NCBI GenBank assembly: GCA_013239625.1
Contig: MU055744.1
Coordinates: 836,355-900,354 of the forward strand
Origin: Lama guanicoe
Lineage: Eukaryota
Reading direction: 5' to 3'
DNA length: 64,000 bases
In this document: positions 25,136 to 46,704 of the stretch, piece by piece
How positions within the stretch are numbered: position 1 is the first letter of the stretch
Layout of the letters: each line of letters starts with the position of its first letter
The notes under the pieces: generated by a model
The model's input: the letters and a program-made list of their open reading frames with translations, nothing else
Databases searched by the model: none
Told to the model about the DNA's origin: nothing
Position numbers and translations under genes: made by a program

Positions 25136-25151
25136 NNNNNNNNNNNNNNNN
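25136..25151. other. Assembly gap (16 N) flanked by C runs
   Basis: Direct reading. Confidence 0.99.
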
Positions 25152-28140: not shown

Positions 28141-30859
28141 CGGGTGGGGCAAGAGGCGCTCTGACCGAAACCACTCCCCTTGCCCCCAGTGCAGCCTCTG
28201 CAGCTGAGACACGGGGGCCGGGGGAACGAGGACAATGACACCCGGGGACGCCCAGACCCGGACGCCCACGAGGCCCTTCGCTGCGGCCACACTGAGCTAC
28301 GCTGTTCTCTGCAGGAAGCCCTGCGGAGGGGCACGCGGGTCCCGGGAGAGGCCACGGACACTGGGCAGGAACGTCAGTAAAGGTGCTGCAGGTCAGGGGC
28401 GCGGGGCGGGTGGGAGGGAGGGAGGGCTTCCCAGGGAAGGGGCTGCCCAGGCCCGGGGGGCCCGGGAGGTGGGATACCTCCTGCCCCAGTGTCACATCCC
28501 CCGCAAGCCGGGCCACGGGACATCCCACGGACACCTCCCAGACCTGTTGCTCATCAGGGGACACCGTCACCCTCGGGGGCTCCGCCTTCCCGCCCTATCC
28601 TCCCCCAGCTCTTCAAATGTGGTCCCTAGGACATCTGTCGTCTCACCCGACCCTCTTAACAAGCCTCCAGGAACCTGTCACCCACCCCCTGCCCCCGGGC
28701 CTTGTAAGGAGAGGCGACTGCAGCTCAGAGAATGCTTGTTCCCAAGGCCACACAGAGCGGAGGGGGCACGTGTGAGGGCCCTCGTCCAGGGCTCCTTATC
28801 CTGAGCAGTAACAGCAGGTGGGCAGAGCCAGGCGCGTGGCTTTGGTGTCAGCTGGACGTCAGTTTCCGTCTCTGCTCTACACTGAGCCTCAGTTTCCTCA
28901 TCTGTAAAACGGGCGCAGGGACACTGGGAGGCCCTGGTGTGATGACCCGCTTTCCTGGGCTGACCCTGAGCCTGGCACGGGGTGGGCGGGTCACCAACTG
29001 TGAGCTCACAGCCCTGGAGTCGGGGCCCAAGTGGGAGATCCCAGGCCACTGGGCACCTCAGGCCTCCCGCCTGCCTGCAAGAAAGTGTGGCCCCACCTAA
29101 GCCCCTTGGCAGTCCCGCTGGCCCCACCCTGCCCTGCAGTCACGGCAGCAGGAGGGGACAAACCCCACACGGCTGGTCCTGGGCCTCAGCTCAGGGAGCC
29201 CAGCCGGCCTGTCCAGCCGACGGCCCGTCAGCGGCGTGAGCAACAGCAGGGCAGCTGGGGAAGCAGCCACCACCCCTCTTCCCGGCCCCACTCCCAGCCC
29301 AGGGGCAGCGTCCTAGCGCCTCAGCCCGCCAGGACGGTGCCCCTCTACACTCACTCCCCTGGCCCCGGCCTGGCCCCGGCCTGCCCGTCAGCTCTGCCCA
29401 GGGTTCAGCGGTCCAGGCCTCGGTCCCCACCAGGGCCTGGGCGGCCGGGGCCCCTCCTCAGCAGCAGGGGTTCCTGATCGAGCCGTCACGGCGGCCAGCC
29501 GCCAGCTCCCCCCAGGCCGAGCGCTCCGAGGACATCACCTTGGCCCAGGCAGCAGCTACGTAGAAACAGACAGCACCTCGTCCAGGCCAGGACCCGCCCC
29601 AGGAGGCACGTCCACTGGGTGGGCCCAGGGTGACCAGGCACAGCAGGACAGCAGCCCTGTCACGGTCCTCGGCCCCGAGTCTGACCTGCTCCCTGTAGGC
29701 CGGGCCTCGAGGCTGCGTGGGCACCGTGTGCCTTGTTCACGGGCACCTCCCAACTCGCAAGACGGCGCCAAGCACGTGGTCGGCGCTTGGCAAATGCCAG
29801 CCAGATGAATGAAAGGCCCCGGCTGTCCGCGTGGGGGGGGGGTCGGCGGCCCCTCCCTGCAGCCCCCCCCGGAAGACGGCTCCTCAGACGGCCCCATTCC
29901 CCTGGAGCAGAAGCAGGTGGGTGGGGGTCACAGCTAAAAGTGCTGATTCGCCTCCAGGTGACGAACATGTCCTGAAATCGAGAGTGGTGACGTCTGCACA
30001 CAGCTGTGACCACACTCGCGCCCCTGACCCCTTAGATGGGGGACCCGTGTGGCGTGTCCATTACATCTCCTGAAGCTGTTTAAATAATGACAAAAGAGCC
30101 CTTCCTGCCAGCCAGGGGCCGGGCCTGGACCCGGGAGCTCTGAGGACCCCCTCAGGAAGGCTCCAGCAGGCAGTGGGCGGGGAGACGCCTGTCTGACGCC
30201 CACCCCGGCTTAGATGGGCCCCCTGTCGTCAGGGGAGACTTCAGGGACCGAGCCTTCCTCTTGTTCTCATGGTCGTACTTGTTACCGCAGCGCTTGGTGG
30301 CGTCTTGTTTGGTCCTCAGAAGAACCTTAGACCAACGGTATACGGGGTCCCGTGTGACAGGGTGGGGGGCGCTGAATGCAGAGGGGCACACAGATGGCCA
30401 GGGCTCCGGGGTGACTCCAGACCGAATGCTGGCACGTGGTCTGGACACGGAGCACAGCTGCAGGCTGCTTTGAGGCTGTCAGAGTGTAATTTTCAGAAAA
30501 TTAAGAGCAAGGCTGTCATGCAAACGTAACACGAATCTGCACCCACAGTGCACTAGCCCAGCGACACGGGGACCAGAGAAGGGCAGCAGCCGGAGGGGAG
30601 GGACAGGCAAGCGAGAGGTGACTCGGGCCAGGGTCCTGCAGGCCAGAGGGCTGCGACCTCCGGGCGGCCTTCTGCCAGACGTGCCCCTGCAAGTCGACAC
30701 GGCTGACACAGCCCACGTTCCTCGTCAGCAGTGACAGCAAAGTCAGCACAGCACAGGCTCCAGACGAGAACGTCCCTCGCGGGGCCTCAAATAACACCCC
30801 AGGGTGTCTTAGAGGGGAAACTTCTTGTCTCCCTTATTTTCAAGTTTTAACTATTTTTC

Positions 30860-31260
30860 TTGACACTGAAAAAGATACAAATAAATGGAAAGGTGTTCCG
30901 TACTGCTGGGTTACAGGGATGAATGTCGTTAAAATGCCGCCACTACCCAACGCCCCCTGCAGACCCGGTGCAAGTCCAATGGCACCCTGCACAGGAAGAG
31001 AACGAGCCGTCTGCATTTGCATGGAACCAGACAGCAAAAGCAATCGTGAGAAAGAGCGAACCTGGAGGCACCACACGTCCTGAGTTTAAACTATGTTACT
31101 AACCTATAGTCATCCAAACAGTGTGGCGCTGGCAGAAAAACAGACACACAGACCAAGGCACCAGAACACAGAGCCCCAGATAAACCCACATACACACGTT
31201 CTGTTAGCTTACAACAAAGGAGCCAAGAACACACAGTAGAGAAAGGGTGGTCCTTTCGAC
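30860..31260 (+). mobile_element. L1M ORF2 fragment (left part, interrupted by Tigger1)
   Basis: 'aaagatacaaataaatggaaaggtgttccgtactgctgggtt...gttaaaatgccgccactacccaa', 'tagtcatccaaacagtgtggcgctggcagaaaaacagacacacagacca'. Confidence 0.85.
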
Positions 31261-32720
31261 CCGGCAGACCTCGTTCTATGGTGCCCCCCTCTATTGTGCT
31301 TTGTACCCCAATTGTTGCAAAGTAAAGGTTGTGGCAACCTCGCCTCGAGCGGGTCTGTCGGCGCCGTTGTCCCAACAGCGTCGGCTCACCCTGTGTCCCT
31401 GCATCACGTGTGGGTTATTCTCACAATATTTCAAATTTCTCGGTACCTCTGAGTCGGTTGCTACTGTCATTGTTCCGGGTGCCACGAACCTCGCCCGCGT
31501 AAGACGCGACCTTAACCCGTGAGCCTCGGGTGCGGTCGGACGGCTCCGCCGAGGGCCGCTCCCCGCCTCCCTCGCTCTCCCCGGGCCCCGCGGCCCCGAG
31601 ACTCGGCAGCGCGGGAGTCAGGCCCGCTGACAGCCCTGCGTGGCCTCCAGGTCCGCACGTGAGGGAGGAGTCTCCCACTCTCCATCCGCAGCTGGAAACG
31701 ATGACGCTTCGTGAGGAAGGCGCGTCGAAAGTCAAGGTCGGCCCAAAACTCGGCCTTCTGCACCAGTCAGCCCAGCTGTGCGGGCAAAGGGAAGGCCCTC
31801 GAAGGCAATCGAGCGCGCCGCTCCCGTGCACACACGAGTGATGAGAAGGGAACCGGCCCTGTTGCTGCCCCGGGGGAAGCCTGCGTGGTCTGCAGCGAAG
31901 ACCAGGCCGGCCTCACGCCCCCGTCGGCCAAGGCCGCGCCCGGAGCGGGGCCCCGGCCCCCTCCATCCTGCGGCGGCGGGAGGCCCCGGGGGCGCGTGAG
32001 GCCGGCGGAGGCCGGCGCCCGAGGCGGAAGGACAGACGCCGGCTCGCAGCCGCCAAGGCCGAGGTGACCGGCGAGTCATGCGCGAGGTGGGGCGCGGCCG
32101 TTCACGGGGGGCTACACTGAGCGCAGGCTTTCGGGGCGGACGGGGCCGCCGTCTGCCGGAAGGGGCCGCCGCCCGGGGCCTCGCCGTCCGGAGAGGAGCC
32201 AGTGCCCGGCTCCCGGCGCCACGGGCGGGTGGCCGTCCCGGCAGGGGCTCACGCAGCTGGCGACCGGGCTGGAGCCAGGGCCCGCCGGCCGTTCCCTGAC
32301 TCCCAGGCCCTTCAGGGGGCGCCGGGGCTGCTCTGCCCGTGCCCGCGGCCGGGCCGACGCCGGCTCCTGCCGCTGCGCGCCCGCTGCCGGGAAACAGCTT
32401 CCCTTCAAAGCGCCCCGGCCCTGGACGCACCTGGGCCCCCGGGCGCTCTGACGGGACGGACGGCGCCACGGACGCGGTTTCCCCGCTGACGGCGCCCGTC
32501 CTGCAGCCCGGCTCAGACGTCATTTCAAGTCTTATTACCCAAGAACTGTGTTCTGTACGAGTCCAGCTGCCTTACATAGTGGTTCCTCTGATGGGTCTGG
32601 GCAAAGTAAAGTGAAAGCCTTCTGGAAAGGACTCCGCCTTTGGGATGCCACGAAGTCCACATGATCACGGGAAGAGGCCAACACAGCAACATTCACAGGC
32701 ATTTGGAAGACGCTGATTCA
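31261..32720 (+). mobile_element. Tigger1 (TcMar) DNA transposon fossil with degraded transposase; centre converted to a CpG island
   Basis: 5' end 'ccggcagacctcgttctatgg' resembles Tigger1 CAGGCATACCTCGTTTTATTG. Translations TLHPQLETMTLREEGASKVKVGPKLGLLHQ, KAIERAAPVHTRVMRR and VVCSEDQ match recalled TPase TLNQKLEMIKLSEEGMSKAETGRKLGLLRQ, KEIKSATPVNTRMIRK and VVWIEDQ. 32520-32720 is close to consensus. Frameshifted; right end missing. Confidence 0.9.
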
Positions 32721-33410
32721 AGACAGCAACCCTGGCAACGGTTTCGGATGTGACACTAGAAGCAAAGGCAACAGAGGCACAAGTAAGCACGTAGAACTAC
32801 ATCAAACTGAGATCCTGAGCCCAGCAGACAAAGGGAACCCTCCACACGGCGGGGAGGCAGTCTGTGGGGCCGGCACGCGAGTTTGCACATCACATATCTG
32901 ATAAAGAGGTACGATCTGAGCTGTATGAAGAACCACACAACTCAGTAACAAAAAACAACAAATTGCTTTAAAAATGGGCCAAGGAATTGAATAGACGTTT
33001 TTCCAAAGACACGTGCAGGTGGCCAACAGGCATGCGACTCGGTGCTCAGCACCACTAGCCATTCAGAGGATGCGAATCGAACCACCGCGAGGCACCGCCA
33101 GCCCTGCGAGAACGGCCGTCACTGGAAGAAAAGAGGTAACCGGTGTCGGCGAGGACGTGGAGGGAAGGGAGCCCCTTTGCTGGTGGAATGTAAACGGGAG
33201 CAGCCACGATGGGAAATTGCACGACATTCCTAGAAAAGTTTAACACAGAGCTACCGTGTCACCCAGCAACCCCACCTCTGGTGTTTATCCGAGGAAGTGA
33301 ACCCCTACCTCAAAGCAGTGTCCGCAGCCCGCGTTCACTGCGGCGCTGATTGCCCAGACATGAGACGACCCAAGCGTCCGGGGTGGGCGGACGGCTAAGA
33401 AGACCGGGGA
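32721..33410 (+). mobile_element. L1M ORF2 3' fragment (right part)
   Basis: 'agaactacatcaaactgaga', 'catatctgataaagagg', 'aaaaatgggccaaggaattgaatagacgtttttccaaaga', 'gctggtggaatgtaaacgggagcagccac'. Confidence 0.85.
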
Positions 33411-35001
33411 TGCGGGAGAACCCCCTTGTTTACATCTCTGGTAAAAGGACAGGGTAGATTAATGGGGCAGTCTCTCACCGAGGAACAAAAGTGCTTAAAA
33501 AAATTTAAAGCAAAGACATAGCAAGGTCATGGGAATAAGGAGGCCACGGTTGACGGGAGTGGAGCCTGCACGCAGCGCTCTTAATCAAAAGTTTGTAGGA
33601 AAACCAAGTGGACCTTGGGCGTCAACATCTCATGCAGGACACAGAGACACCCGCCCAGCCCCGCTCATCGGGGTGGCCCCCAGGAGGCAAGTGAACCAGA
33701 AGCAGACCCACCAACAGCCCCCCAGGGTCACCGGGGAGCCGCCTCGGGGCGGAGCGCGGGGCTGGGGCTGGCGGTGGGGCTGTCCCTGGGAGCTGGGACC
33801 GCCGTGCAGACCCACACCTCCCAGTGACTCAAAGGAGCCTCATCAGGGAACTTAGATCAAAGTGACCCTGGCTCTGTGCTGGAGGACCCAGAGGGACCAG
33901 GGGCAGACCCTCCTCTCGGAAGTTCACCTTCATCCACGACCTCAAAGGAATTCCACAAATTATTTACTAACAACAAGCAGTCTCGGTAGAAGTGCAGAAG
34001 GAACAAAACGCCAAGATTGAGGGACAGGAGAGGAAACAGATCCACCAACTTCAGATACTGGAAAAGTCTGACGTGTTCTGAAACAGCCATGTCTCTGTCA
34101 AGCTTAAAGAAATGAGAGCCAGATGGAAAATCCACTGGGAACTATTACAAAGGAACAGATAGCGTAAAACCAAATAGAAAGCTGGCCATGAAGAAGACGG
34201 TAATTAAAATTACTTATTGAATTTCTGTTTCCATAGAAAATTCAATTCAACTGAAGGAGCTTTACTGTGAAAATACAGAGCCAATGTGCACGCCGCACAA
34301 GACCCGACACGCTAGCGCAGGCCAGGCCAGAGGCGGTGCAGGCCCCACCACGCAGGGACAGGCATGGCCCGAAGGGACAGAACGGCCCAAAAAGCCAGGG
34401 AAGCCTGGGCAGGGCTAACAGAAAGGCCTGTGTCCCTGGGCTCGTCTTAGTGAAGCTGCAGAGAGAAGGAGGACAGGTGACCCCTGAACAGCACAGGTTT
34501 GAGCTGAGCGGGTCCACTTACACACAGGTTTTTTTCAATAAATATATCGGGAAAGTTTCTTCGGATATTTGCAATAATATGAGAAAACTTGCAGACAAAG
34601 TATATTGCCTGGAAATATCAAAAAATATTAAGAAAAAGTTACGCACGTCACGAACACATCGAGTGCGAGCAGATACCTGTCTGTCCTCGCACGGCTGGCA
34701 TCGTCCCTCGGCGGCCGGTGCCGGGCGCAGCGCGCTGTGTCCCGCGGGCGGTGGCCGCCGGCCCTGGCGGGCAGCTCGCCTCGTCGGCGGGCGCACAGCC
34801 CGGGACTCCGAACGTATCTCCTCTTCCTGACAACTGCCCTAACGTTTTCTGCTCTCTGGCTTGCTTTATTGTAAAACTACCAATAAAACACGCAAAACAC
34901 GTGTCATGAACCGTTCACGTTGTCAGCACGGTCCGGTCAGCGCTGGGTTATGAGCGGTTCAGATCTGAGGGAGTCAGAAGCTCCCCGTGCATTTTCGGCA
35001 G
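32846..35001 (+). repeat. 2,156-bp tandem duplication, copy 1
   Basis: Sequence and ORF track repeat with a constant offset of 2156 (e.g. ORFs 33013/35169, 34267/36423). Confidence 0.97.
34474..35001 (+). mobile_element. Tigger2a/MER28-like non-autonomous TcMar element, copy 1 (right TIR cut off by the duplication junction)
   Basis: 'caggtgacccctgaacagcacaggtttgagctgagcgggtccacttacaca' resembles Tigger2 CAGTTGACCCTTGAACAACACGGGTTTGAACTGCGCGGGTCCACTTATAC. Confidence 0.85.
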
Positions 35002-37157
35002 ACGGCGGGGAGGCAGTCTGTGGGGCCGGCACGCGAGTTTGCACATCACATATCTGATAAAGAGGTACGATCTGAGCTGTATGAAGAACCACACAACTCA
35101 GTAACAAAAAACAACAAATTGCTTTAAAAATGGGCCAAGGAATTGAATAGACGTTTTTCCAAAGACACGTGCAGGTGGCCAACAGGCATGCGACTCGGTG
35201 CTCAGCACCACTAGCCATTCAGAGGATGCGAATCGAACCACCGCGAGGCACCGCCAGCCCTGCGAGAACGGCCGTCACTGGAAGAAAAGAGGTAACCGGT
35301 GTCGGCGAGGACGTGGAGGGAAGGGAGCCCCTTTGCTGGTGGAATGTAAACGGGAGCAGCCACGATGGGAAATTGCACGACATTCCTAGAAAAGTTTAAC
35401 ACAGAGCTACCGTGTCACCCAGCAACCCCACCTCTGGTGTTTATCCGAGGAAGTGAACCCCTACCTCAAAGCAGTGTCCGCAGCCCGCGTTCACTGCGGC
35501 GCTGATTGCCCAGACATGAGACGACCCAAGCGTCCGGGGTGGGCGGACGGCTAAGAAGACCGGGGATGCGGGAGAACCCCCTTGTTTACATCTCTGGTAA
35601 AAGGACAGGGTAGATTAATGGGGCAGTCTCTCACCGAGGAACAAAAGTGCTTAAAAAAATTTAAAGCAAAGACATAGCAAGGTCATGGGAATAAGGAGGC
35701 CACGGTTGACGGGAGTGGAGCCTGCACGCAGCGCTCTTAATCAAAAGTTTGTAGGAAAACCAAGTGGACCTTGGGCGTCAACATCTCATGCAGGACACAG
35801 AGACGCCCGCCCAGCCCCGCTCATCGGGGTGGCCCCCAGGAGGCAAGTGAACCAGAAGCAGACCCACCAACAGCCCCCCAGGGTCACCGGGGAGCCGCCT
35901 CGGGGCGGAGCGCGGGGCTGGGGCTGGCGGTGGGGCTGTCCCTGGGAGCTGGGACCGCCGTGCAGACCCACACCTCCCAGTGACTCAAAGGAGCCTCATC
36001 AGGGAACTTAGATCAAAGTGACCCTGGCTCTGTGCTGGAGGACCCAGAGGGACCAGGGGCAGACCCTCCTCTCGGAAGTTCACCTTCATCCACGACCTCA
36101 AAGGAATTCCACAAATTATTTACTAACAACAAGCAGTCTCGGTAGAAGTGCAGAAGGAACAAAACGCCAAGATTGAGGGACAGGAGAGGAAACAGATCCA
36201 CCAACTTCAGATACTGGAAAAGTCTGACGTGTTCTGAAACAGCCATGTCTCTGTCAAGCTTAAAGAAATGAGAGCCAGATGGAAAATCCACTGGGAACTA
36301 TTACAAAGGAACAGATAGCGTAAAACCAAATAGAAAGCTGGCCATGAAGAAGACGGTAATTAAAATTACTTATTGAATTTCTGTTTCCATAGAAAATTCA
36401 ATTCAACTGAAGGAGCTTTACTGTGAAAATACAGAGCCAATGTGCACGCCGCACAAGACCCGACACGCTAGCGCAGGCCAGGCCAGAGGCGGTGCAGGCC
36501 CCACCACGCAGGGACAGGCATGGCCCGAAGGGACAGAACGGCCCAAAAAGCCAGGGAAGCCTGGGCAGGGCTAACAGAAAGGCCTGTGTCCCTGGGCTCG
36601 TCTTAGTGAAGCTGCAGAGAGAAGGAGGACAGGTGACCCCTGAACAGCACAGGTTTGAGCTGAGCGGGTCCACTTACACACAGGTTTTTTTCAATAAATA
36701 TATCGGGAAAGTTTCTTCGGATATTTGCAATAATATGAGAAAACTTGCAGACAAAGTATATTGCCTGGAAATATCAAAAAATATTAAGAAAAAGTTACGC
36801 ACGTCACGAACACATCGAGTGCGAGCAGATACCTGTCTGTCCTCGCACGAGTGGCATCGTCCCTCGGCGGCCGGTGCCGGGCGCAGCGCGCTGTGTCCCG
36901 CGGGCGGTGGCCGCCGGCCCTGGCGGGCAGCTCGCCTCGTCGGCGGGCGCACAGCCCGGGACTCCGAACGTATCTCCTCTTCCTGACAACTGCCCTAACG
37001 TTTTCTGCTCTCTGGCTTGCTTTATTGTAAAACTACCAATAAAACACGCAAAACACGTGTCATGAACCGTTCACGTTGTCAGCACGGTCCGGTCAGCGCT
37101 GGGTTATGAGCGGTTCAGATCTGAGGGAGTCAGAAGCTCCCCGTGCATTTTCGGCAG
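35002..37157 (+). repeat. 2,156-bp tandem duplication, copy 2
   Basis: Only differences noticed: 33649 A vs 35805 G, and 34694-34695 GC vs 36850-36851 AG. Confidence 0.97.
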
Positions 37158-37184
37158 CGCGGGGGTCGGTTTAAGGGTCATCTG
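36630..37184 (+). mobile_element. Tigger2a/MER28-like element, copy 2 (both TIRs present)
   Basis: Left TIR caggtgacccctgaac pairs with right gtttaagggtcatctg (13/16 complementary). Confidence 0.85.
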
Positions 37185-37480
37185 CGTTGGAAAACAGCTG
37201 TGGAAGGAGACATCACCCTCTGAAGAGTCACACTGACGCTGGCTTGCGGAAGGCGGAGCGAAGACCAAACCAGAAGCCCGTGAAAGGCCGTCTTCAACGA
37301 GCTGAAAGAAAATGCCCGGCCAGCAGGCTCCCCAGGACTGGGGGCAAAATAAAGCCGTTTCAGGACAGTGAAGCCTGAGAGAATTCAACAGCAACGGACT
37401 GTCCCTGCTGGGAGCCCGAGGCCGAATTCCAGGCATCTCCTCGCGTGATTCCAGGCAGAAGGCCTGCGTGCAGGGGGAGC
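37185..37480 (+). mobile_element. Old L1 ORF1 3' part (host of the Tigger2a insertion)
   Basis: 'cgtcttcaacgagctgaaagaaaat', 'ggcaaaataaagccgtttcaggacagtgaagcctgagagaattc' resemble L1M ORF1; the 5' part lies around 36096-36620. Confidence 0.6.
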
Positions 37481-37659
37481 AGGGGACCACGGAAAGCGGG
37501 AGAGCCGCGTGAGCCCTGAGTGTGTGCAGGGGACGAAGTCTTGTGTTACAGTCCGGCCAGCGGGGACTCACATGCCTGCAAGTCCAGGGTGCAAGGAACG
37601 AGGAGGCCAAGGGCTCTGTGCTTCCTGCGTTGTCTGATGCACTCTGCGTCTGCATCAGA

Positions 37660-41099: not shown

Positions 41100-42560
41100 T
41101 TAAATGTGACCATATTTCAGCCCAAGTGTTCTCTCAGGTGCTGCGTTTGCACCTCTGTTCGGGGTGCCTTTCTCCCACAGATACGTTTGTAACACAAAGT
41201 TCAAATGGGTTGTTGCTACATTTGACTCTTTCGAATGGCCGTCTCAATTTTGTTCCGTTTAGCTTCAGCATATAAATTTACCCAATTAAACCTACAAGCA
41301 CCATCAAAACGTTCCTCCCACAAGTACGATTTTTCCAAAGCACAATTACACGACTTGAAATTAGATCTCGTGCACTGTCTGAGGCCTGGAGCGAAGTCTG
41401 TCTGTCTCCCCTTTGGCTTCCACGGGGATAAACGGCAGTGCCCTCCACGTGGGGACTTTGTTTTCAATCATGACGATTCTTAGAAGATTCGAAAGCTCGG
41501 GGGCTTTGGCTCCGTTTGTCACATCGATCACTGAAAGCCGTCCAAATGAATTCAAATAGAACGCAGGAGACTCCCGGGTGATACTTCGATGGCGCAAACA
41601 CGCCTGAAGCCCGGCCGCAGGCGGCAGGCGGCAGGCGGCAGGCGGCAGGCGGCAGGCGGCAGGCGGAGAGAGCGCGCGCCGCAGCGCGGACCGGCTCGCC
41701 CCTTCGTCGCGCGGCCCCTCCCCGGCGCGCCGTGCGTGCGCCGCCCCTGCGCACACGCGGGCGCTCGGGCATTCGGGTGCCTGCGCCGTCCGTTTCCATC
41801 GGCTGCACACGGCGTGGCTTCAGTGCGGTTAGGGGTCCTGCGCACGTCGCAGCCCGTTCCCAGTAATAAAGAATGAGTTCCTCGATTTCGGCAAAATGCT
41901 GTATTTTTTTAATCACGGAGCTACGATCCTCCAAAATTCAGCCTCTTGTCACCTTCAGAACAAACAAACTTCAGTGTTGAGGGGCTCGTTTGGTTTTCCC
42001 TGCACGTGCAGCCCTGTTGACAGCACACCAGATGTTTCTCGTTTGTTCCAATGAACTTCCAGGTGTTCCCCTCTGTTCCATCCACTGGGTTAAAAAAATA
42101 AATAAAAATGGTTTGGGAATGAATTTAACTGGTTTCCTGCTCGAAGCAACTGATGATGCAGATCTAAACAGGTGCCCCCAGGGGCGGGACAGTGCGCTGG
42201 TGACACGCGCAACCGGGACCGGGGACGAAGAAAGCGACTTTCCAAGAACAGACGCTCACTCCGAGTAAAATCACGGGCTCCACCGCGTGGGCGTCAGCGC
42301 AGCCCTTGCGGCCACGCGGGTGCCGCTGTCTCCCGCCCCCAGAAGCGGGCGGGCCGGATGGCCACGCCCACAGCCCCGCCCCGAAGCGGGCCGGGCCCGC
42401 TGGCCACGCCCACCCGCTCTCGCCCTGCCGCCATTGCCGCGCAGCCCCGCCGGCCTTACGCTCGATGGCCGCTCCCTTCTCTTCGAGGCTTTGCGAGGCC
42501 CGGTCTCCACGTTTCTGCTCGCTGCCGCGTGGGCTACTGCAGAGGTTTTAAAGCATTACC
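41100..42560 (-). mobile_element. hAT-Blackjack-like transposase fossil (frameshifted)
   Basis: Minus-strand peptides, in order: SASSVASSRKPVKFIP (cf. SVSSDASNRKSVKLIP, first catalytic D region), GDKRLNFGG (cf. GDNTNTNFGG), LLGTGCDVR (cf. LGIGCxxH), RALPFIPVEAK, and NCALEKSYLWEERFDGACRFNWVNLY (cf. NCALEYLDLWEESFDGA..FNWINLY). Comparisons are to recalled consensus. Confidence 0.8.
41617..41665 (+). repeat. (GCAGGCG)7 perfect heptamer tandem repeat
   Basis: Seven exact copies; gives the RLPPAAC repeats seen in the ORF track. Confidence 0.97.
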
Positions 42561-43450
42561 AAACAATAAAAAACAGTTGCGGATTTGCACCCTGCAGCCC
42601 CTGACAAACCGCGGGAGAGGTTAGGCTGGTCCCGACCCCTCGGCCCTCCACGCGGGCTGCGCGCAGTCCGTGGCTTCCCGACGCGAGCCTTCCCCGACCC
42701 AGCCCCTGGGCCCGGTGGCCCGCCCTCACTCGGGGCGGCCCCGGAAGACGGCCTTCAGGTAGGACCCCTGCCGTCAGACTCCCGTGCAGGGCCAGGCAGG
42801 AGGTCGGGGCGCGCGACGCCTCGGGGCAGGGCGGGCGGCCGGAGAGCCAGCGGCCTGGCGGGGGGCGCCCCTGTGCGGCCGCCCTCCGCGGCCTCCTCCG
42901 GCGGCGGTGGTCCGGGGGGACGGGTGCCCCCGGAGCGGCTCGGCCGGCCCCAGAGTGCAGAGCCGGGCTGGGCGGCAGAGCAGCGGGCTGGGTGGGAGGG
43001 CCCCCGCCGAGGCGAGCGTGCAGCCTTCGGGCACAGAGACCCCGGGAGGGCGCCGTGCCTCCACGCCCCCGAACGGCCTCCCTCCGACAAGGCAGGGCTG
43101 TCAGGCCCCATCAGACCTTCCGCCCCGGGGGCCACTTGCCTTCTGCATCGCTCCGCGACCCAGGCGCGGGCCCACCGTCCCCGGCCACACGGCCTCGGCC
43201 GGCTGCACGCGCCACGGGCCCGCGGGCGCCTCGCTCCGCAGCACGGGACCCGCGGGACGTGCCTCGGGCCAGCGGGGCGGGCCTATGGCGAGGCAGCGGC
43301 ACGGGACCACCACCCCCGGCCCCGGTGGCCCTGCCTCCCACCTCGTCACCCAGAAAGCTCCGTGGCGTCCTACCTCCTGGCCCGGCTGGACGGTGGCCTC
43401 TGTGGAGGAGGACGCTGTCCTTCCGTGTAACAGCCAGCAGGTAGAGACAG
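42280..43450. promoter_or_regulatory. Orphan CpG island (about 85% GC at its core)
   Basis: 42841-42900 has 51/60 G+C with dense CpG; no associated exon recognised. Confidence 0.7.
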
Positions 43451-43860
43451 CCCGCAAGTCCACCGGCAGGAACCGGTGAGCAGACGTGGTCTGTGCTCTC
43501 GGCGGAGCAGCGCTCAGCCACTGCAGGGGGCGGCGTCCTGGTGCCCGTCGCGCTGGGGACGGACCTCAGAAACCGACGCGGGAAAGCAGCCAGGCAGGAG
43601 CGGTCACCCATCGTGCGACCCCGGGGAGAGGGAAGGCCACAAAGAGCAGATCCAGGCGGACGGGCGGCTGCCGGGAAACTGGGGCAGAGGAGCGGGCGTG
43701 GTTATTTCATGTGCGTGGGGCGATAAACACGTTTCCGAGCTAGCTGGAGGGCTGGCCGCGCGACATCGTGAATGCGCTAGACGCCACTGAGCTGTTCACT
43801 TTAAGGTGGATAATTGTATGTTATGCAAATTTCATCTCGCTAGAAATACATTAAAGAGAA
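43330..43860 (+). mobile_element. L1MB-like 3' end, GC/CpG-shifted in its 5' part
   Basis: 'gacatcgtgaatgcgctagacgccactgagctgttcactttaaggtggataattgtatgttatgcaaatttcatctc' matches the L1MB terminus. Confidence 0.8.
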
Positions 43861-46704
43861 AAGGGAAAGGTTCCGTATATATTTTGAGCCCTTGTGCTTC
43901 AAGGCGCCATAAACGCTTTGAACCGGCGGCCACTGTTCAGTGAGCGCTTTGAGCCCAGAAAGTAGAAGGCACGGACCTGGGAGCCAAGGCGCGCGCGGCA
44001 CAGCCCTTCCCACCGCAGCGGCCCTCCCACGCCCACCCCGAGCCCAGCCCTGGGAATCCGGCTTCCATCCTCACAGCTTCAGTCTGTAGCACGAGAGGCC
44101 CAGTCCCCAGGGATGATACCCTTCCTCCAGGGAGGTTCACAAGGGTCTCTGCGAACCTCCTGCTCTCGGTTCCCTCAGGGTAGCTGAGCCAAAAGCAAAG
44201 AAAGGGGTGCCCCATCCTCCCTCCCCACCCTCCCCACGAGGGGCTGGGGGTGCAGCCGCGTCATGGGGCAGGAGGGTCGTTCTGGGCGCCCTCTGGGGGC
44301 CACCACCCTGGGGATAAGAGTCGATGGACCACCACAGCAGCCAGGGACAACGGAAGCCGGGACTCCCAGGCCTGGCGCGGGAAGGCTGCGGTCTCTGCAT
44401 GGCGAGCAGCCCAGGCCCGCAGAAGCGTGGGTGCGGGGGTGGGGTCAGGCAGGCGGGGCCAGGCAGGCAGGATGTAGCGAGGATGCACCGGAAGGCATTC
44501 CAGCTCATCCCACTAACTCTCCTGAATTGAGGCGGGGTTTTGGGGGATGCTGAGAGCCACCATACTGAAGCATCAAAGACCGGACAGAAAGGGCCGGTGG
44601 AGAGGCTCAAGGAGTCTGAACAAGGCGAAAACCTGCCCACACGCCCTCAGCCTGCCCCGGGTCACGTGGGCAGCGCACCATGACCCCTGCTGCCCACCGT
44701 TCTTAGCCGGGAGGCTTCTCTGCTGAGGGGTTGCTCTGTCCATGAACACACAGGACTGAAGTCCCCAGAACAACCCTCGAAGAACAAGGAGTCAGAAGTC
44801 CCCAGTGTCCCCACCACCCTCAGAGAGAGAGCTCAGAGGCTCCGCTCATTAGGACACACTCTTGGTCCCCCTCCCCCATCTAACTTCCCCACGGCCTCGC
44901 AGGGACTCCCAGGAGCACCTCCGCAGTAAACTACTTGCATCCAGATCTCTGTCTTGGGGTCTGCCTGGGTGGGAAGCCAGCCTACGGCACACTCAGGCCC
45001 CCGAGGCCGTCCTGGGCGGGAAGACGTCCGTTGTGCCTGAGAAGGAGAAGGAAAATCACAGCCGGCCCCGGGCTCACGGCCCAGAATTAACCACACGGTG
45101 AAGGGGCCGTCCCCCAACTGCCCCCGAGAAGAGGCTTCAAACTGGACTTTCCAGGCAAACCCAGAGCCAGCCAGGCACTGGGCACCGGCCCCTTCCTTCT
45201 AAACAGCGGAGACGTCACCTTAGGCTCCGGACCCACCCGGCCCAGCGTCCAGCACCGTCTCCTGCTCAGAGGACAGGGGGACCCTGGTGCCTGGTGGTGC
45301 GTCCTCTGCCCGTCCTCCACCACCTGTCCTCCCCTGCAGTCGGGGACCCAACCAGATGCTGCCTGGTTCCGTCCCTACCCCTCACTCTGCTCCCATTCAT
45401 GTCCTCCCATTGCTCCAGAGGGCGACTGTACAACAGGCGCACGGGGACACTGAGACAGGGCATAAAATGCTGAAACACTGCCTGTCGCTCAGCAGGGACA
45501 GGGACTTTCCATGCTCCCCTCTCCTTCCAGACACCGGGGCCATTCAGAAACGAAGGGGTTAGTTCCAGGACCTCACTCCAGCCTGGCTATCTGCCCGTTC
45601 TCAGCACCCTGCCTCACCTCCTCCCCGTTGTCCTCCACCCCTTTGTCTCGCTCACCTCCAGAGAACCCTAGAACCTGCCCTTTCTGCACCTCCCACTTGG
45701 GGAATTATACTCAGTTCTCAGTCCCTTGGCTAAATCTCTCCTCTCCTACAGGGCTAGCTCCTTTGGCGCAGGGCAGGGTGGTTTTTTGGTTTTTTGTTTT
45801 TCTTTCTTGCTTGCTATTGTGTTCTCAGCACCGGGCAAGGTACCAGCCCAGACCAGGAACTCAGCAACTGCCTGCTAGGGGATGAATGAATGCGTGAATG
45901 AAATGCCCTCTGAGCTGGCGCCCCGCCCCCCCGCCAGCCCCCACCGGTTACAGCAAGCAGCGCACGCGGGCATCCCGGCTGCGCTGTGACTCTGGACTCT
46001 CGGGAATGCTTTGGCAGCACAAAGAATTCTGCTCCAAACCCCAACTGGACTCCTTATCTTCAAGGATTGCACAAAACACTGGAACTCACTTTAATCCTAA
46101 CTGTCCGTTTAGAGAACATGCAAACCAGTAAGGCTCAAGGGCGGGGGTGGGGGGGGCGGTGAACTCGGCAATCCTCCATCTGAATCAGATGCTGGGCGGG
46201 CGTGAGCCGGCTGTTCTGAAACACACGGACAGATTCCTAACGCTCGTGTTGAAAGCCTGCAGAGGCACATCTGGGCTCACTGGCGGCACAGGCCTCAGCT
46301 GGAGGGCTGGACGTGGTCCTCCTTCTGGTGGGCTGACTTGCGACTTCAGGCGTGGCCTGACAGGGGCACCTCGACCAGCCTTTGAGAAGATCCACATCCT
46401 ATCTTCTCCAAAACCTTCCGTGACACCCGAGGACGTGGACGGAACTTTATATAAGTCAGCAGTGGCTTGTTCTCCAGCTCCACTGCCCGGCAAGCCCCGC
46501 CGCGCGCTCGCTGCACTGCAGCAGGGGGCGGGAGGGTTACACGGACACGGGGTCGGGGGGGGGGCCAGGTCGTCGCCACGAAGCAGGTCAGGGCACCGAA
46601 GCAGCTAGGGGGCGTCCCTGGAGCCAGACAGGCTTCAGATCACAGCTGCCTACTCAGCCCCTCCATGGCCCACAGCAAGTCACTCACCCCAGAGCCTCAT
46701 CCAT

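What the first reader, a model, noticed from the sequence alone, without database searches (positions are those of the whole stretch)
31261..32720. A Tigger1 transposase fossil rewritten into an 85% GC CpG island, with a GC gradient inside one element
Seen: the element's ends stay close to the AT-rich Tigger1 sequence (32521-32580 is 25/60 G+C), while the centre is 52/60 G+C at 31921-31980 and 51/60 at 32161-32220, with dense CpG. The homology is still readable: 'ggctacactgagcgcaggctttcggggcggacggggccgccgtctgccggaaggggccgcc' versus recalled consensus 'ggctacactaaacaacagattttcaatgtagatgaaacagccttctattggaagaagatgcc'. Nearly all differences are A/T to G/C. Known: old TEs normally lose CpG and drift toward AT; kb-scale weak-to-strong substitution peaks are the signature of GC-biased gene conversion at long-lived recombination hotspots, best known in PRDM9-lacking canids. 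Inference: this was a stable, probably unmethylated hotspot that built a de novo CpG island from a dead transposon, with the TE consensus serving as the ancestral sequence.
Basis: partly seen in the sequence, partly recalled or inferred. Interest (0 to 1): 0.8.

Follow-up and report, generated by a model that had tools for sequence, protein, structure and literature searches.

The report
Dead transposon turned into CpG island
A dead Tigger1 "jumping gene" in a camelid genome has had about two thirds of the A/T letters in its middle changed to G/C, making a CpG island; this is a clear example of a process already described in dogs and other mammals.

Summary
The span 31261-32720 has 69% G+C and CpG o/e 0.92, and its core holds the most G+C-rich 600 bases of the window.

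No Tigger1 DNA consensus was available. I built a majority protein reference from about 320 database fragments, some named "tigger transposable element-derived protein 1-like". I back-translated it and aligned it to the window.
- One colinear chain joins 31641-32719 to transposase residues 1-407 (score 190; shuffled references 20 ± 2.6).
- The GC-rich centre alone scores 44.6 against 14.3 ± 1.6.

Changes at sites whose ancestral base is determinable:

| Part | A/T now G/C | G/C now A/T |
|---|---|---|
| Centre | 122/193 (63%) | 3/158 (1.9%) |
| 5' part | 43% | 3.6% |
| 3' end | 28% | 8.7% |

The A/T-to-G/C changes are strand-symmetric and transition-rich (86:36). At least 25 of 27 testable CpGs are new.

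The best explanation is GC-biased gene conversion at a long-lived recombination hotspot, on an already GC-rich background. The 5' non-coding 380 bases are only weakly tied to Tigger.

The mechanism is known, and first readers of this scan flagged many similar cases elsewhere in this genome.

The parts
31261..31640 (+). Presumed 5' terminal non-coding part of the Tigger1 fossil (inverted repeat and leader). It includes a GC 0.78 sub-peak at 31501-31600.
   Evidence: The evidence is weak. Residues 45-59 of the Tigger-fragment protein P0004 align to 31324-31368 with score 36 against a null of 21.4 +/- 3.8 (largest null 41). No DNA reference was available.
31641..32719 (+). Fossil of the Tigger1-type transposase ORF, residues 1-407 of the reference. 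The frame is broken. There are 21 gaps, all deletions in the window, 139 nt in total.
   Evidence: Alignment of the back-translated majority reference gives score 190.3, against 20.3 +/- 2.6 for shuffled references. The piece 32452-32661 hits 84 Tigger fragments, E down to 1.3e-7. Those fragments carry DDE_1, and their relatives carry PF04218, PF03221 and PF03184 with TIGD1-like names.
31853..32498 (.). Hyper-converted core of the GC peak (GC 0.78-0.85).
   Evidence: Change-point model: boundaries at 31852/31853 (range 31765-31939) and 32498/32499 (range 32472-32525), 2*dLL 36.2. W->S is 133/210 and S->W is 3/170. The centre 31901-32500 alone aligns with score 44.6 against a null of 14.3 +/- 1.6.
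31301..32500 (.). CpG island by the sequence criteria (length, GC, observed/expected CpG).
   Evidence: All 100-base bins have CpG o/e 0.76-1.24 and GC 0.51-0.85. The island caller gives 31201-32680, GC 0.684, o/e 0.92, 159 CpG.
30622..31080 (+). Left flank: LINE-1 ORF2 fossil, the host element into which the Tigger inserted.
   Evidence: phmmer against PDB matches LINE-1 ORF2p residues 790-830, E 1.7e-4. Pfam finds nothing.
32995..33240 (+). Right flank: the same LINE-1 ORF2 fossil continues, on the same strand and further along the protein.
   Evidence: phmmer against PDB: the only four hits are LINE-1 ORF2p, residues 1081-1146, but E is 0.48, which is weak.

Best explanation
**What it is.** A Tigger1 (pogo/Tc1-mariner type) DNA transposon inserted into an older LINE-1 and died. 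Its 3' third was later lost.

**What happened to it.** The whole neighbourhood then evolved under a fixation bias favouring G/C over A/T. A roughly 650-base core (31853-32498) felt this bias far more strongly than the rest. The core lies inside a CpG-rich stretch of about 1.2 kb.

**Most likely cause.** GC-biased gene conversion. Repeated meiotic double-strand breaks at one place give heteroduplexes whose A/T:G/C mismatches are repaired towards G/C. New A/T->G/C mutations therefore fix more often, and G/C->A/T mutations fix less often. Over tens of millions of years this turned a sequence of about 40% GC into one of 80% GC and created CpGs by chance of composition.

**Shown here:** Tigger ancestry through the centre, the direction and size of the substitution bias, its gradient, and the new origin of the CpGs.

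**Inferred:** that recombination is the cause, that the hotspot lasted long, and that the island is unmethylated in the germline (suggested by CpG o/e of about 0.9).
For: - **Ancestry.** One colinear chain joins 31641-32719 to transposase residues 1-407, score 190 against 20 +/- 2.6. The centre alone scores 44.6 against 14.3 +/- 1.6.
- **Direction of change.** In the centre W->S is 122/193 and S->W is 3/158. In the 5' part the figures are 40/94 and 2/56; at the 3' end 22/79 and 4/46. Fisher tests give centre vs 3' end p = 1.2e-7 and centre vs 5' part p = 0.0014. A strict filter (majority vote >= 0.7, sites away from gaps) gives the same rates.
- **Two-state estimates.** Equilibrium GC is 0.97 (0.93-1.0) in the centre and 0.76 at the 3' end. 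The W->S rate-time product is about three times higher in the centre (1.02 vs 0.35). The S->W product is about 3.5 times lower (0.031 vs 0.108). A fixation bias predicts both shifts; a mere loss of CpG decay does not.
- **Symmetry and spectrum.** Changes are strand-symmetric: A->G 54/128 and T->C 38/82. Both transitions and transversions contribute, 86:36.
- **New CpGs.** All 27 CpGs with a determinable ancestor come from non-CG dinucleotides. Only one or two sit at codons that may hide an old CGN.
- **No other source.** There is no repeat expansion and no paralogous donor in the window.
Against: - There is no direct evidence of recombination, methylation state or timing.
- The ancestral states come from a protein-derived reference. 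They cover only about 58% of the aligned ORF bases (626 of 1079), almost all of them first and second codon positions, and none of the 5' 380 bases.
- The S->W difference between centre and ends is not significant on its own (p = 0.16; 3 against 6 events).
- The 3' edge of the peak is sharper than expected from conversion tracts of a few hundred bases (GC 0.78 to 0.51 between adjacent 100-base bins).
- Alignment optimisation in an 80% GC target can slightly understate S->W.
Confidence: 0.7

Rival explanations
1. Functional orphan CpG island: the sequence was recruited as a promoter or enhancer. Its GC and CpG content are kept or raised by selection together with germline hypomethylation, and not by a recombination-linked bias.
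For: CpG o/e is 0.8-1.2 over 1.2 kb, as in unmethylated islands. Three RNA runs from reproductive-tract samples hold 8-13% of the words of 31000-33000. Orphan CpG islands are often enhancers (PMC11170920).
Against: - Hypomethylation stops CpG loss but does not convert 63% of A/T sites.
- The changes are spread evenly over about 650 bases at sites of a dead ORF, are strand-symmetric and include transversions, which does not look like selection on motifs.
- The flanks and the rest of the window show the same bias at lower strength.
- Function could be a consequence of the conversion without being its cause.
Confidence: 0.1
2. Local mutation bias: error-prone repair or some other AT->GC mutagenic process at this spot, with or without recombination, raised GC without any fixation bias.
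For: The W->S rate-time product is three times that of the 3' end. Deletions are also concentrated in the core, 113 of 139 deleted bases, which hints at local DNA damage and repair.
Against: S->W changes are fewer in the core, not merely outnumbered: 1.9% against 3.6-8.7%. A pure W->S mutation excess does not predict that. From my own knowledge, not checked in a paper here, mutations linked to recombination and to DNA breaks in mammals are not biased towards G/C.
Confidence: 0.1
3. Mosaic: the GC-rich centre is not Tigger-derived but an unrelated GC-rich insert or replacement between two Tigger pieces.
For: Pfam and tblastn see nothing in the centre. The 3' edge of the GC peak is sharp.
Against: - The centre alone aligns colinearly to reference residues 92-329, z about 17-19 against two kinds of shuffle.
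- G and C sites of the ancestor are kept (C 65/68, G 78/90). W->S changes are 70% transitions, p = 7e-6 against the 1:1 expected from chance pairing.
- The alignment needs no insertion in the window.
Confidence: 0.02

Closest known systems
GC peaks and CpG-island-like recombination hotspots of the dog genome (Axelsson et al. 2012, from my knowledge; Berglund et al. 2014, PMC4350167)
   Same: Both are kilobase-scale peaks of GC and CpG with strongly W->S-biased substitution, outside promoters, attributed to gBGC at stable, unmethylated hotspots. In the dog, gBGC makes such regions detectable as CpG islands.
   Different: The genome here is a camelid, whose PRDM9 status was not examined. Recombination and methylation are not shown for this locus. 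The ancestral state comes from a transposon reference and not from outgroup genomes.
PRDM9-independent hotspots of placental mammals inferred from equilibrium GC (Joseph et al. 2024, PMC11161765)
   Same: Both show a local rise of equilibrium GC, measured in 100-base windows, at hypomethylated CpG-island-like loci. The paper proposes this as the explanation for the GC-richness of CpG islands. It reports such peaks in 63-75% of 52 species with or without PRDM9.
   Different: That work averages over thousands of loci orthologous to mouse or dog hotspots. Here a single locus is followed to near saturation (equilibrium GC about 0.97). Camelids are not named in its main text.
Orphan CpG islands generated by gBGC tracts (Kocher et al. 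2024, PMC11170920)
   Same: The paper proposes gBGC as a way to gain orphan CpG islands. [quoted passage not shown]
   Different: It gives no case traced base by base from a dated transposon ancestor and includes no camelid. Enhancer activity, the theme of that paper, is untested here.
Tigger1 / TIGD1 (pogo-like DNA transposon of eutherians; Smit and Riggs 1996, from my knowledge)
   Same: The element is colinear with the transposase (CENP-B_N, HTH_Tnp_Tc5, DDE_1) over residues 1-407.
   Different: It is truncated at the 3' end. All frames are broken, and no Pfam domain is detectable on the window's own translation. Its composition is about 80% GC, whereas the inferred ancestor has 37-56% GC at determinable sites.

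Membership tests
Tigger1-type (pogo/Tc1-mariner) DNA transposon fossil | Sequence colinear with the Tigger1 transposase ORF (CENP-B_N, then HTH_Tnp_Tc5, then DDE_1) | tested here: met
   One chain joins 31641-32719 to reference residues 1-407, score 190 against a null of 20 +/- 2.6. The reference was built from fragments named TIGD1-like that carry PF04218, PF03221 and PF03184.
Tigger1-type (pogo/Tc1-mariner) DNA transposon fossil | Transposase domains recognisable on the element's own translation | tested here: not met
   Pfam finds nothing in any stop-free piece at E <= 10. Only the 70-residue piece 32452-32661 still finds relatives (E 1.3e-7). This is expected after about 40% change at determinable sites, so it does not count against ancestry.
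Tigger1-type (pogo/Tc1-mariner) DNA transposon fossil | Terminal inverted repeats and TA target-site duplication | tested here: inconclusive
   The 3' end is missing: the alignment stops at 32719, where the LINE-1 resumes. At the 5' end there is only a weak match of P0004 to 31324-31368. No DNA consensus was available.
CpG island (sequence definition of Gardiner-Garden and Frommer) | Length > 200 bases, GC > 50%, CpG observed/expected > 0.6 | tested here: met
   31201-32680: 1480 bases, GC 0.684, o/e 0.92. Every 100-base bin from 31301 to 32500 has o/e >= 0.76.
CpG island (biological definition) | Unmethylated in the germline, with CxxC-protein or H3K4me3 occupancy | not testable with these tools
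   No bisulfite or chromatin data. The high CpG o/e is compatible with hypomethylation, but also with strong gBGC opposing CpG loss.
GC-biased gene conversion tract or hotspot | W->S substitutions far exceed S->W relative to the ancestor | tested here: met
   Centre: 122/193 against 3/158, equilibrium GC 0.97.
GC-biased gene conversion tract or hotspot | The bias is local (kilobase scale) relative to the flanks of the same element | tested here: met
   W->S fractions are 0.38, 0.63 and 0.28 in three segments, 2*dLL 36.2. Centre vs 3' end p = 1.2e-7.
GC-biased gene conversion tract or hotspot | Strand-symmetric, affecting transitions and transversions, with S->W depressed as well as W->S raised | tested here: met
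   A->G 54/128 against T->C 38/82, and A->C 26 against T->G 15. The S->W rate-time product is 0.031 in the centre against 0.108 at the 3' end, but the S->W contrast alone is not significant (p = 0.16).
GC-biased gene conversion tract or hotspot | Coincides with elevated meiotic recombination (LD map, DMC1/SPO11 signal, crossovers), and W->S alleles segregate at higher frequency | not testable with these tools
No population or ChIP data could be reached.

The most novel reading that the evidence does not exclude
Camelids may have a dog-like landscape of long-lived, PRDM9-independent hotspots. These would keep turning old transposons into orphan CpG islands across the genome. This locus would then be one of many still-active, germline-unmethylated hotspots near RXRA whose GC is close to saturation. 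The repeated first-reader notes of 'repeat rewritten into CpG island' in this genome fit this reading, but they are unchecked.
Probability: 0.3. Interest if true: 0.55.

Novelty: new member of a known kind. Interest (0 to 1): 0.35.

Why it matters
- **A clean single-locus record.** A dead transposon gives a known starting sequence, so this locus is an unusually clean record of how far biased gene conversion can push DNA. About 63% of A/T sites are converted, equilibrium GC is about 0.97, and a full CpG island has been made from nothing.
- **A possible camelid-wide pattern.** If such peaks are common in camelids, as the scan's notes suggest, they could serve as fossil maps of recombination hotspots in a family for which I found no fine-scale recombination map in the searches run here.
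- **A caution for annotation.** Many "CpG islands" in such genomes may be by-products of recombination, not regulatory elements.
- **The mechanism itself is already established** in dogs and other mammals.

Tried and rejected
- **Pfam** on 15 ORFs and stop-free pieces of the element found no transposase domain.
- **Word search** with the 70-residue piece found nothing, because of its length window.
- **tblastn** of the first 84 fragments against the region gave only noise in the centre. Protein-level local search is too weak there.
- **Self-BLAST** found no second Tigger copy in the window to use as a DNA reference.
- **MAFFT** on all fragments stacked non-overlapping fragments on top of each other, giving references of 219 and 282 residues. 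I rejected these and replaced them by HSP voting on a scaffold.
- **The viral-contig scan** gave no relative.
- **Scans not run.** I did not scan metagenome or prokaryote-genome contigs for Tigger copies. Hits there would be stray mammalian DNA, likely human, which I am not to keep.
- **Recalled consensus not used.** The recalled stretch was checked only through the residues it encodes.
There is therefore no read evidence on transcription, polymorphism or other camelids.
- **Pfam on the LINE-1 flanks** found nothing. PDB sequences gave the LINE-1 assignment instead.
- **Literature searches** for PRDM9 in camelids gave nothing usable.

Full report
**Observation**

32521-32580 has 25/60 G+C, 31921-31980 has 52/60 and 32161-32220 has 51/60.
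- The span 31261-32720 has GC 0.687, 159 CpG and CpG o/e 0.92.
- The six 100-base bins from 31901 to 32500 have GC 0.78-0.85 and o/e 0.79-1.16.
- A smaller sub-peak (GC 0.78) lies at 31501-31600.
- The bins just outside the span are at GC 0.48-0.52.
- The whole window is unusually GC-rich for a mammal (GC 0.609, CpG o/e 0.52). Even so, 31901-32500 is its most GC-rich 600-base stretch, and 31201-32680 is its strongest CpG island together with 42101-44110.
- Tandem repeats do not explain the composition.

**Is the centre Tigger1?**

No transposon DNA library was at hand, and the window holds no second copy. Pfam sees nothing in any ORF or stop-free piece of the element.

The least changed piece, 32452-32661 (70 residues), found 84 short proteins in the full HMMER search, with E down to 1.3e-7. 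These proteins carry DDE_1. Two word searches seeded from such fragments gave about 240 more. Some are named "tigger transposable element-derived protein 1-like", and many carry PF04218, PF03221 and PF03184.

From all 320 fragments I derived a majority protein reference of 486 residues, inside a script only, by HSP voting on a scaffold. Depth is mostly above 100 and agreement about 0.8.
- I back-translated the reference into degenerate codons and aligned it to 31560-32790 with a neutral score.
- The best local alignment is a single colinear chain: window 31641-32719 against reference residues 1-407, score 190.3. Twenty shuffled references gave 20.3 ± 2.6.
- The GC-rich centre 31901-32500, taken alone against its own part of the reference (residues 92-329), scores 44.6. 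Shuffled references gave 14.3 ± 1.6, and shuffled window sequence gave 14.8 ± 1.8.
- Ancestral C and G are kept (65/68 and 78/90). W->S changes are 86 transitions to 36 transversions (p = 7e-6 against 1:1), which chance pairing of an AT-rich with a GC-rich sequence would not give.
Of 43 determinable sites, 28 are identical, 15 are W->S and none is any other change.

The "mosaic" rival is therefore rejected.

The 5' 380 bases (31261-31640) are non-coding in Tigger1.

**Direction and gradient of change**

Only sites whose ancestral base follows unambiguously from the reference residue were used. There are 626 of them, almost all first and second codon positions.

| Segment | W->S | S->W |
|---|---|---|
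| 31641-31900 | 40/94 (43%) | 2/56 (3.6%) |
| 31901-32500 | 122/193 (63%) | 3/158 (1.9%) |
| 32501-32719 | 22/79 (28%) | 4/46 (8.7%) |

- Centre vs 3' end gives p = 1.2e-7; centre vs 5' part gives p = 0.0014.
- A three-segment model puts the edges at 31852/31853 (support range 31765-31939) and 32498/32499 (range 32472-32525), with 2*dLL 36.2.
- Restricting to well-supported reference positions away from gaps leaves the rates unchanged: 0.37, 0.61 and 0.24.
- In the core (31853-32498) 133 of 154 mismatches are W->S, 3 are S->W and 18 are neither.
- The changes are strand-symmetric: A->G 54/128 and T->C 38/82.
- All 27 CpGs whose ancestral dinucleotide is determinable arose from non-CG dinucleotides (13 TG, 4 CA, 10 others). 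The fragment votes suggest a hidden ancestral CGN codon at one or two of these sites. The island is therefore essentially new.

**Mechanism**

A two-state model gives an equilibrium GC of 0.97 (0.93-1.0) in the centre, 0.92 in the 5' part and 0.76 at the 3' end. The W->S rate-time product is 1.02 in the centre against 0.35 at the 3' end. The S->W product is 0.031 against 0.108.

A rise of W->S together with a fall of S->W is what a fixation bias does.
- Hypomethylation alone cannot create G/C from A/T.
- A W->S mutation excess alone would not lower S->W.
- As a rough inference, assuming a two-fold S->W mutation bias, the ratios correspond to a time-averaged scaled bias B of about 4 in the centre and about 2 at the 3' end, with similar underlying neutral rates in both. 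One parameter therefore accounts for the gradient. This figure is indicative only, because it rests on 3 and 4 S->W events.

The published model fits.
- In the dog, hotspots sit in unmethylated CpG islands, stay in place and raise stationary GC by gBGC, which makes more regions detectable as islands (PMC4350167).
- Most of 52 placental mammals, with intact PRDM9, show such equilibrium-GC peaks at hypomethylated loci. The authors offer this as the explanation of the GC-richness of CpG islands (PMC11161765).

I therefore rate gBGC at a long-lived hotspot, on a regionally GC-rising background, at about 0.7. Recombination, methylation and timing remain inferred.

**Surroundings**

The element lies inside one LINE-1 ORF2 fossil on the same strand.
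- 30622-31080 matches ORF2p residues 790-830 (E 1.7e-4).
- 32995-33240 matches residues 1081-1146 weakly (E 0.48; the only four hits are all ORF2p).
- The alignment to Tigger ends at 32719. The last third of the transposon, and by my estimate about 70 codons of the LINE-1, are missing at that junction.
- The flanks are at GC 0.48-0.53, so the peak is confined to about 1 kb.
- Earlier notes of this scan say the genome is a camelid and that the window lies near RXRA. They list a second repeat-built island at 41100-43860, another converted Tigger1 9.4 kb past the window's end, and many similar first-reader notes elsewhere in this genome. These notes are unchecked, but they suggest a genome-wide pattern and not a singular locus.

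**What could not be done**
- The run index shows the stretch nearly intact (0.79-0.96 of words) in five closely related organism labels from six studies. It shows 8-13% of its words in three RNA runs from reproductive-tract samples. Neither result could be examined further.
- No orthologue from another mammalian family could be fetched, so the age of the conversion is open.

**Unexplained details**
- The 3' edge of the peak is sharp, while the 5' side is graded.
- All 21 alignment gaps are deletions in the window, and 113 of the 139 deleted bases lie in the core. This may reflect break-associated deletions, or alignment uncertainty in the most diverged part.

**Verdict**

The cause is very probably GC-biased gene conversion. 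This is a striking instance of a known process in a new lineage, not a new kind of thing.

Noticed in passing
window 42101-44110: This is the second strong CpG island of the window (GC 0.687, o/e 0.86, 203 CpG; 600-base windows reach GC 0.80 at 42701). It lies about 10 kb from the Tigger island, so GC peaks recur at short spacing here.
   Followed up: no
window 34571-35660, 36731-37580, 41441-41950: Three stretches have CpG o/e of 0.93-1.23 but only moderate GC (0.55-0.62). They are CpG-rich without the extreme GC of the Tigger peak and may be a different kind of island.
   Followed up: no
window 31641-32719: All 21 gaps in the alignment to the transposase reference are deletions in the window; none is an insertion. 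113 of the 139 deleted bases fall in the 646-base GC core.
   Followed up: partly
window 30622-31080 and 32995-33240: The Tigger fossil is nested in a LINE-1 ORF2 fossil on the same strand (ORF2p residues 790-830 on the left, 1081-1146 on the right). At 32719/32720 the 3' third of the Tigger and part of the LINE-1 are missing, as if one deletion removed both.
   Followed up: partly
Nothing was laid, and these letters were kept out of all later searches.
   Followed up: no
proteins P0107, P0180, P0216, P0244, P0206, P0208, P0222, P0172: Tigger1-like protein fragments in public databases are labelled Helicobacter pylori, Trichuris suis, Apteryx owenii, Dromaius novaehollandiae and Gavialis gangeticus. 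Tigger1 is a eutherian repeat, so these look like mammalian DNA contaminating those assemblies.
   Followed up: no
window 31000-33000: Three RNA-seq runs labelled 'reproductive system', from two studies, hold 8-13% of the sampled words of this stretch. Part of it may be transcribed, or the libraries may carry genomic DNA.
   Followed up: no
window 25136-25151: A run of 16 N, the only one in the window. It was left as it is.
   Followed up: no
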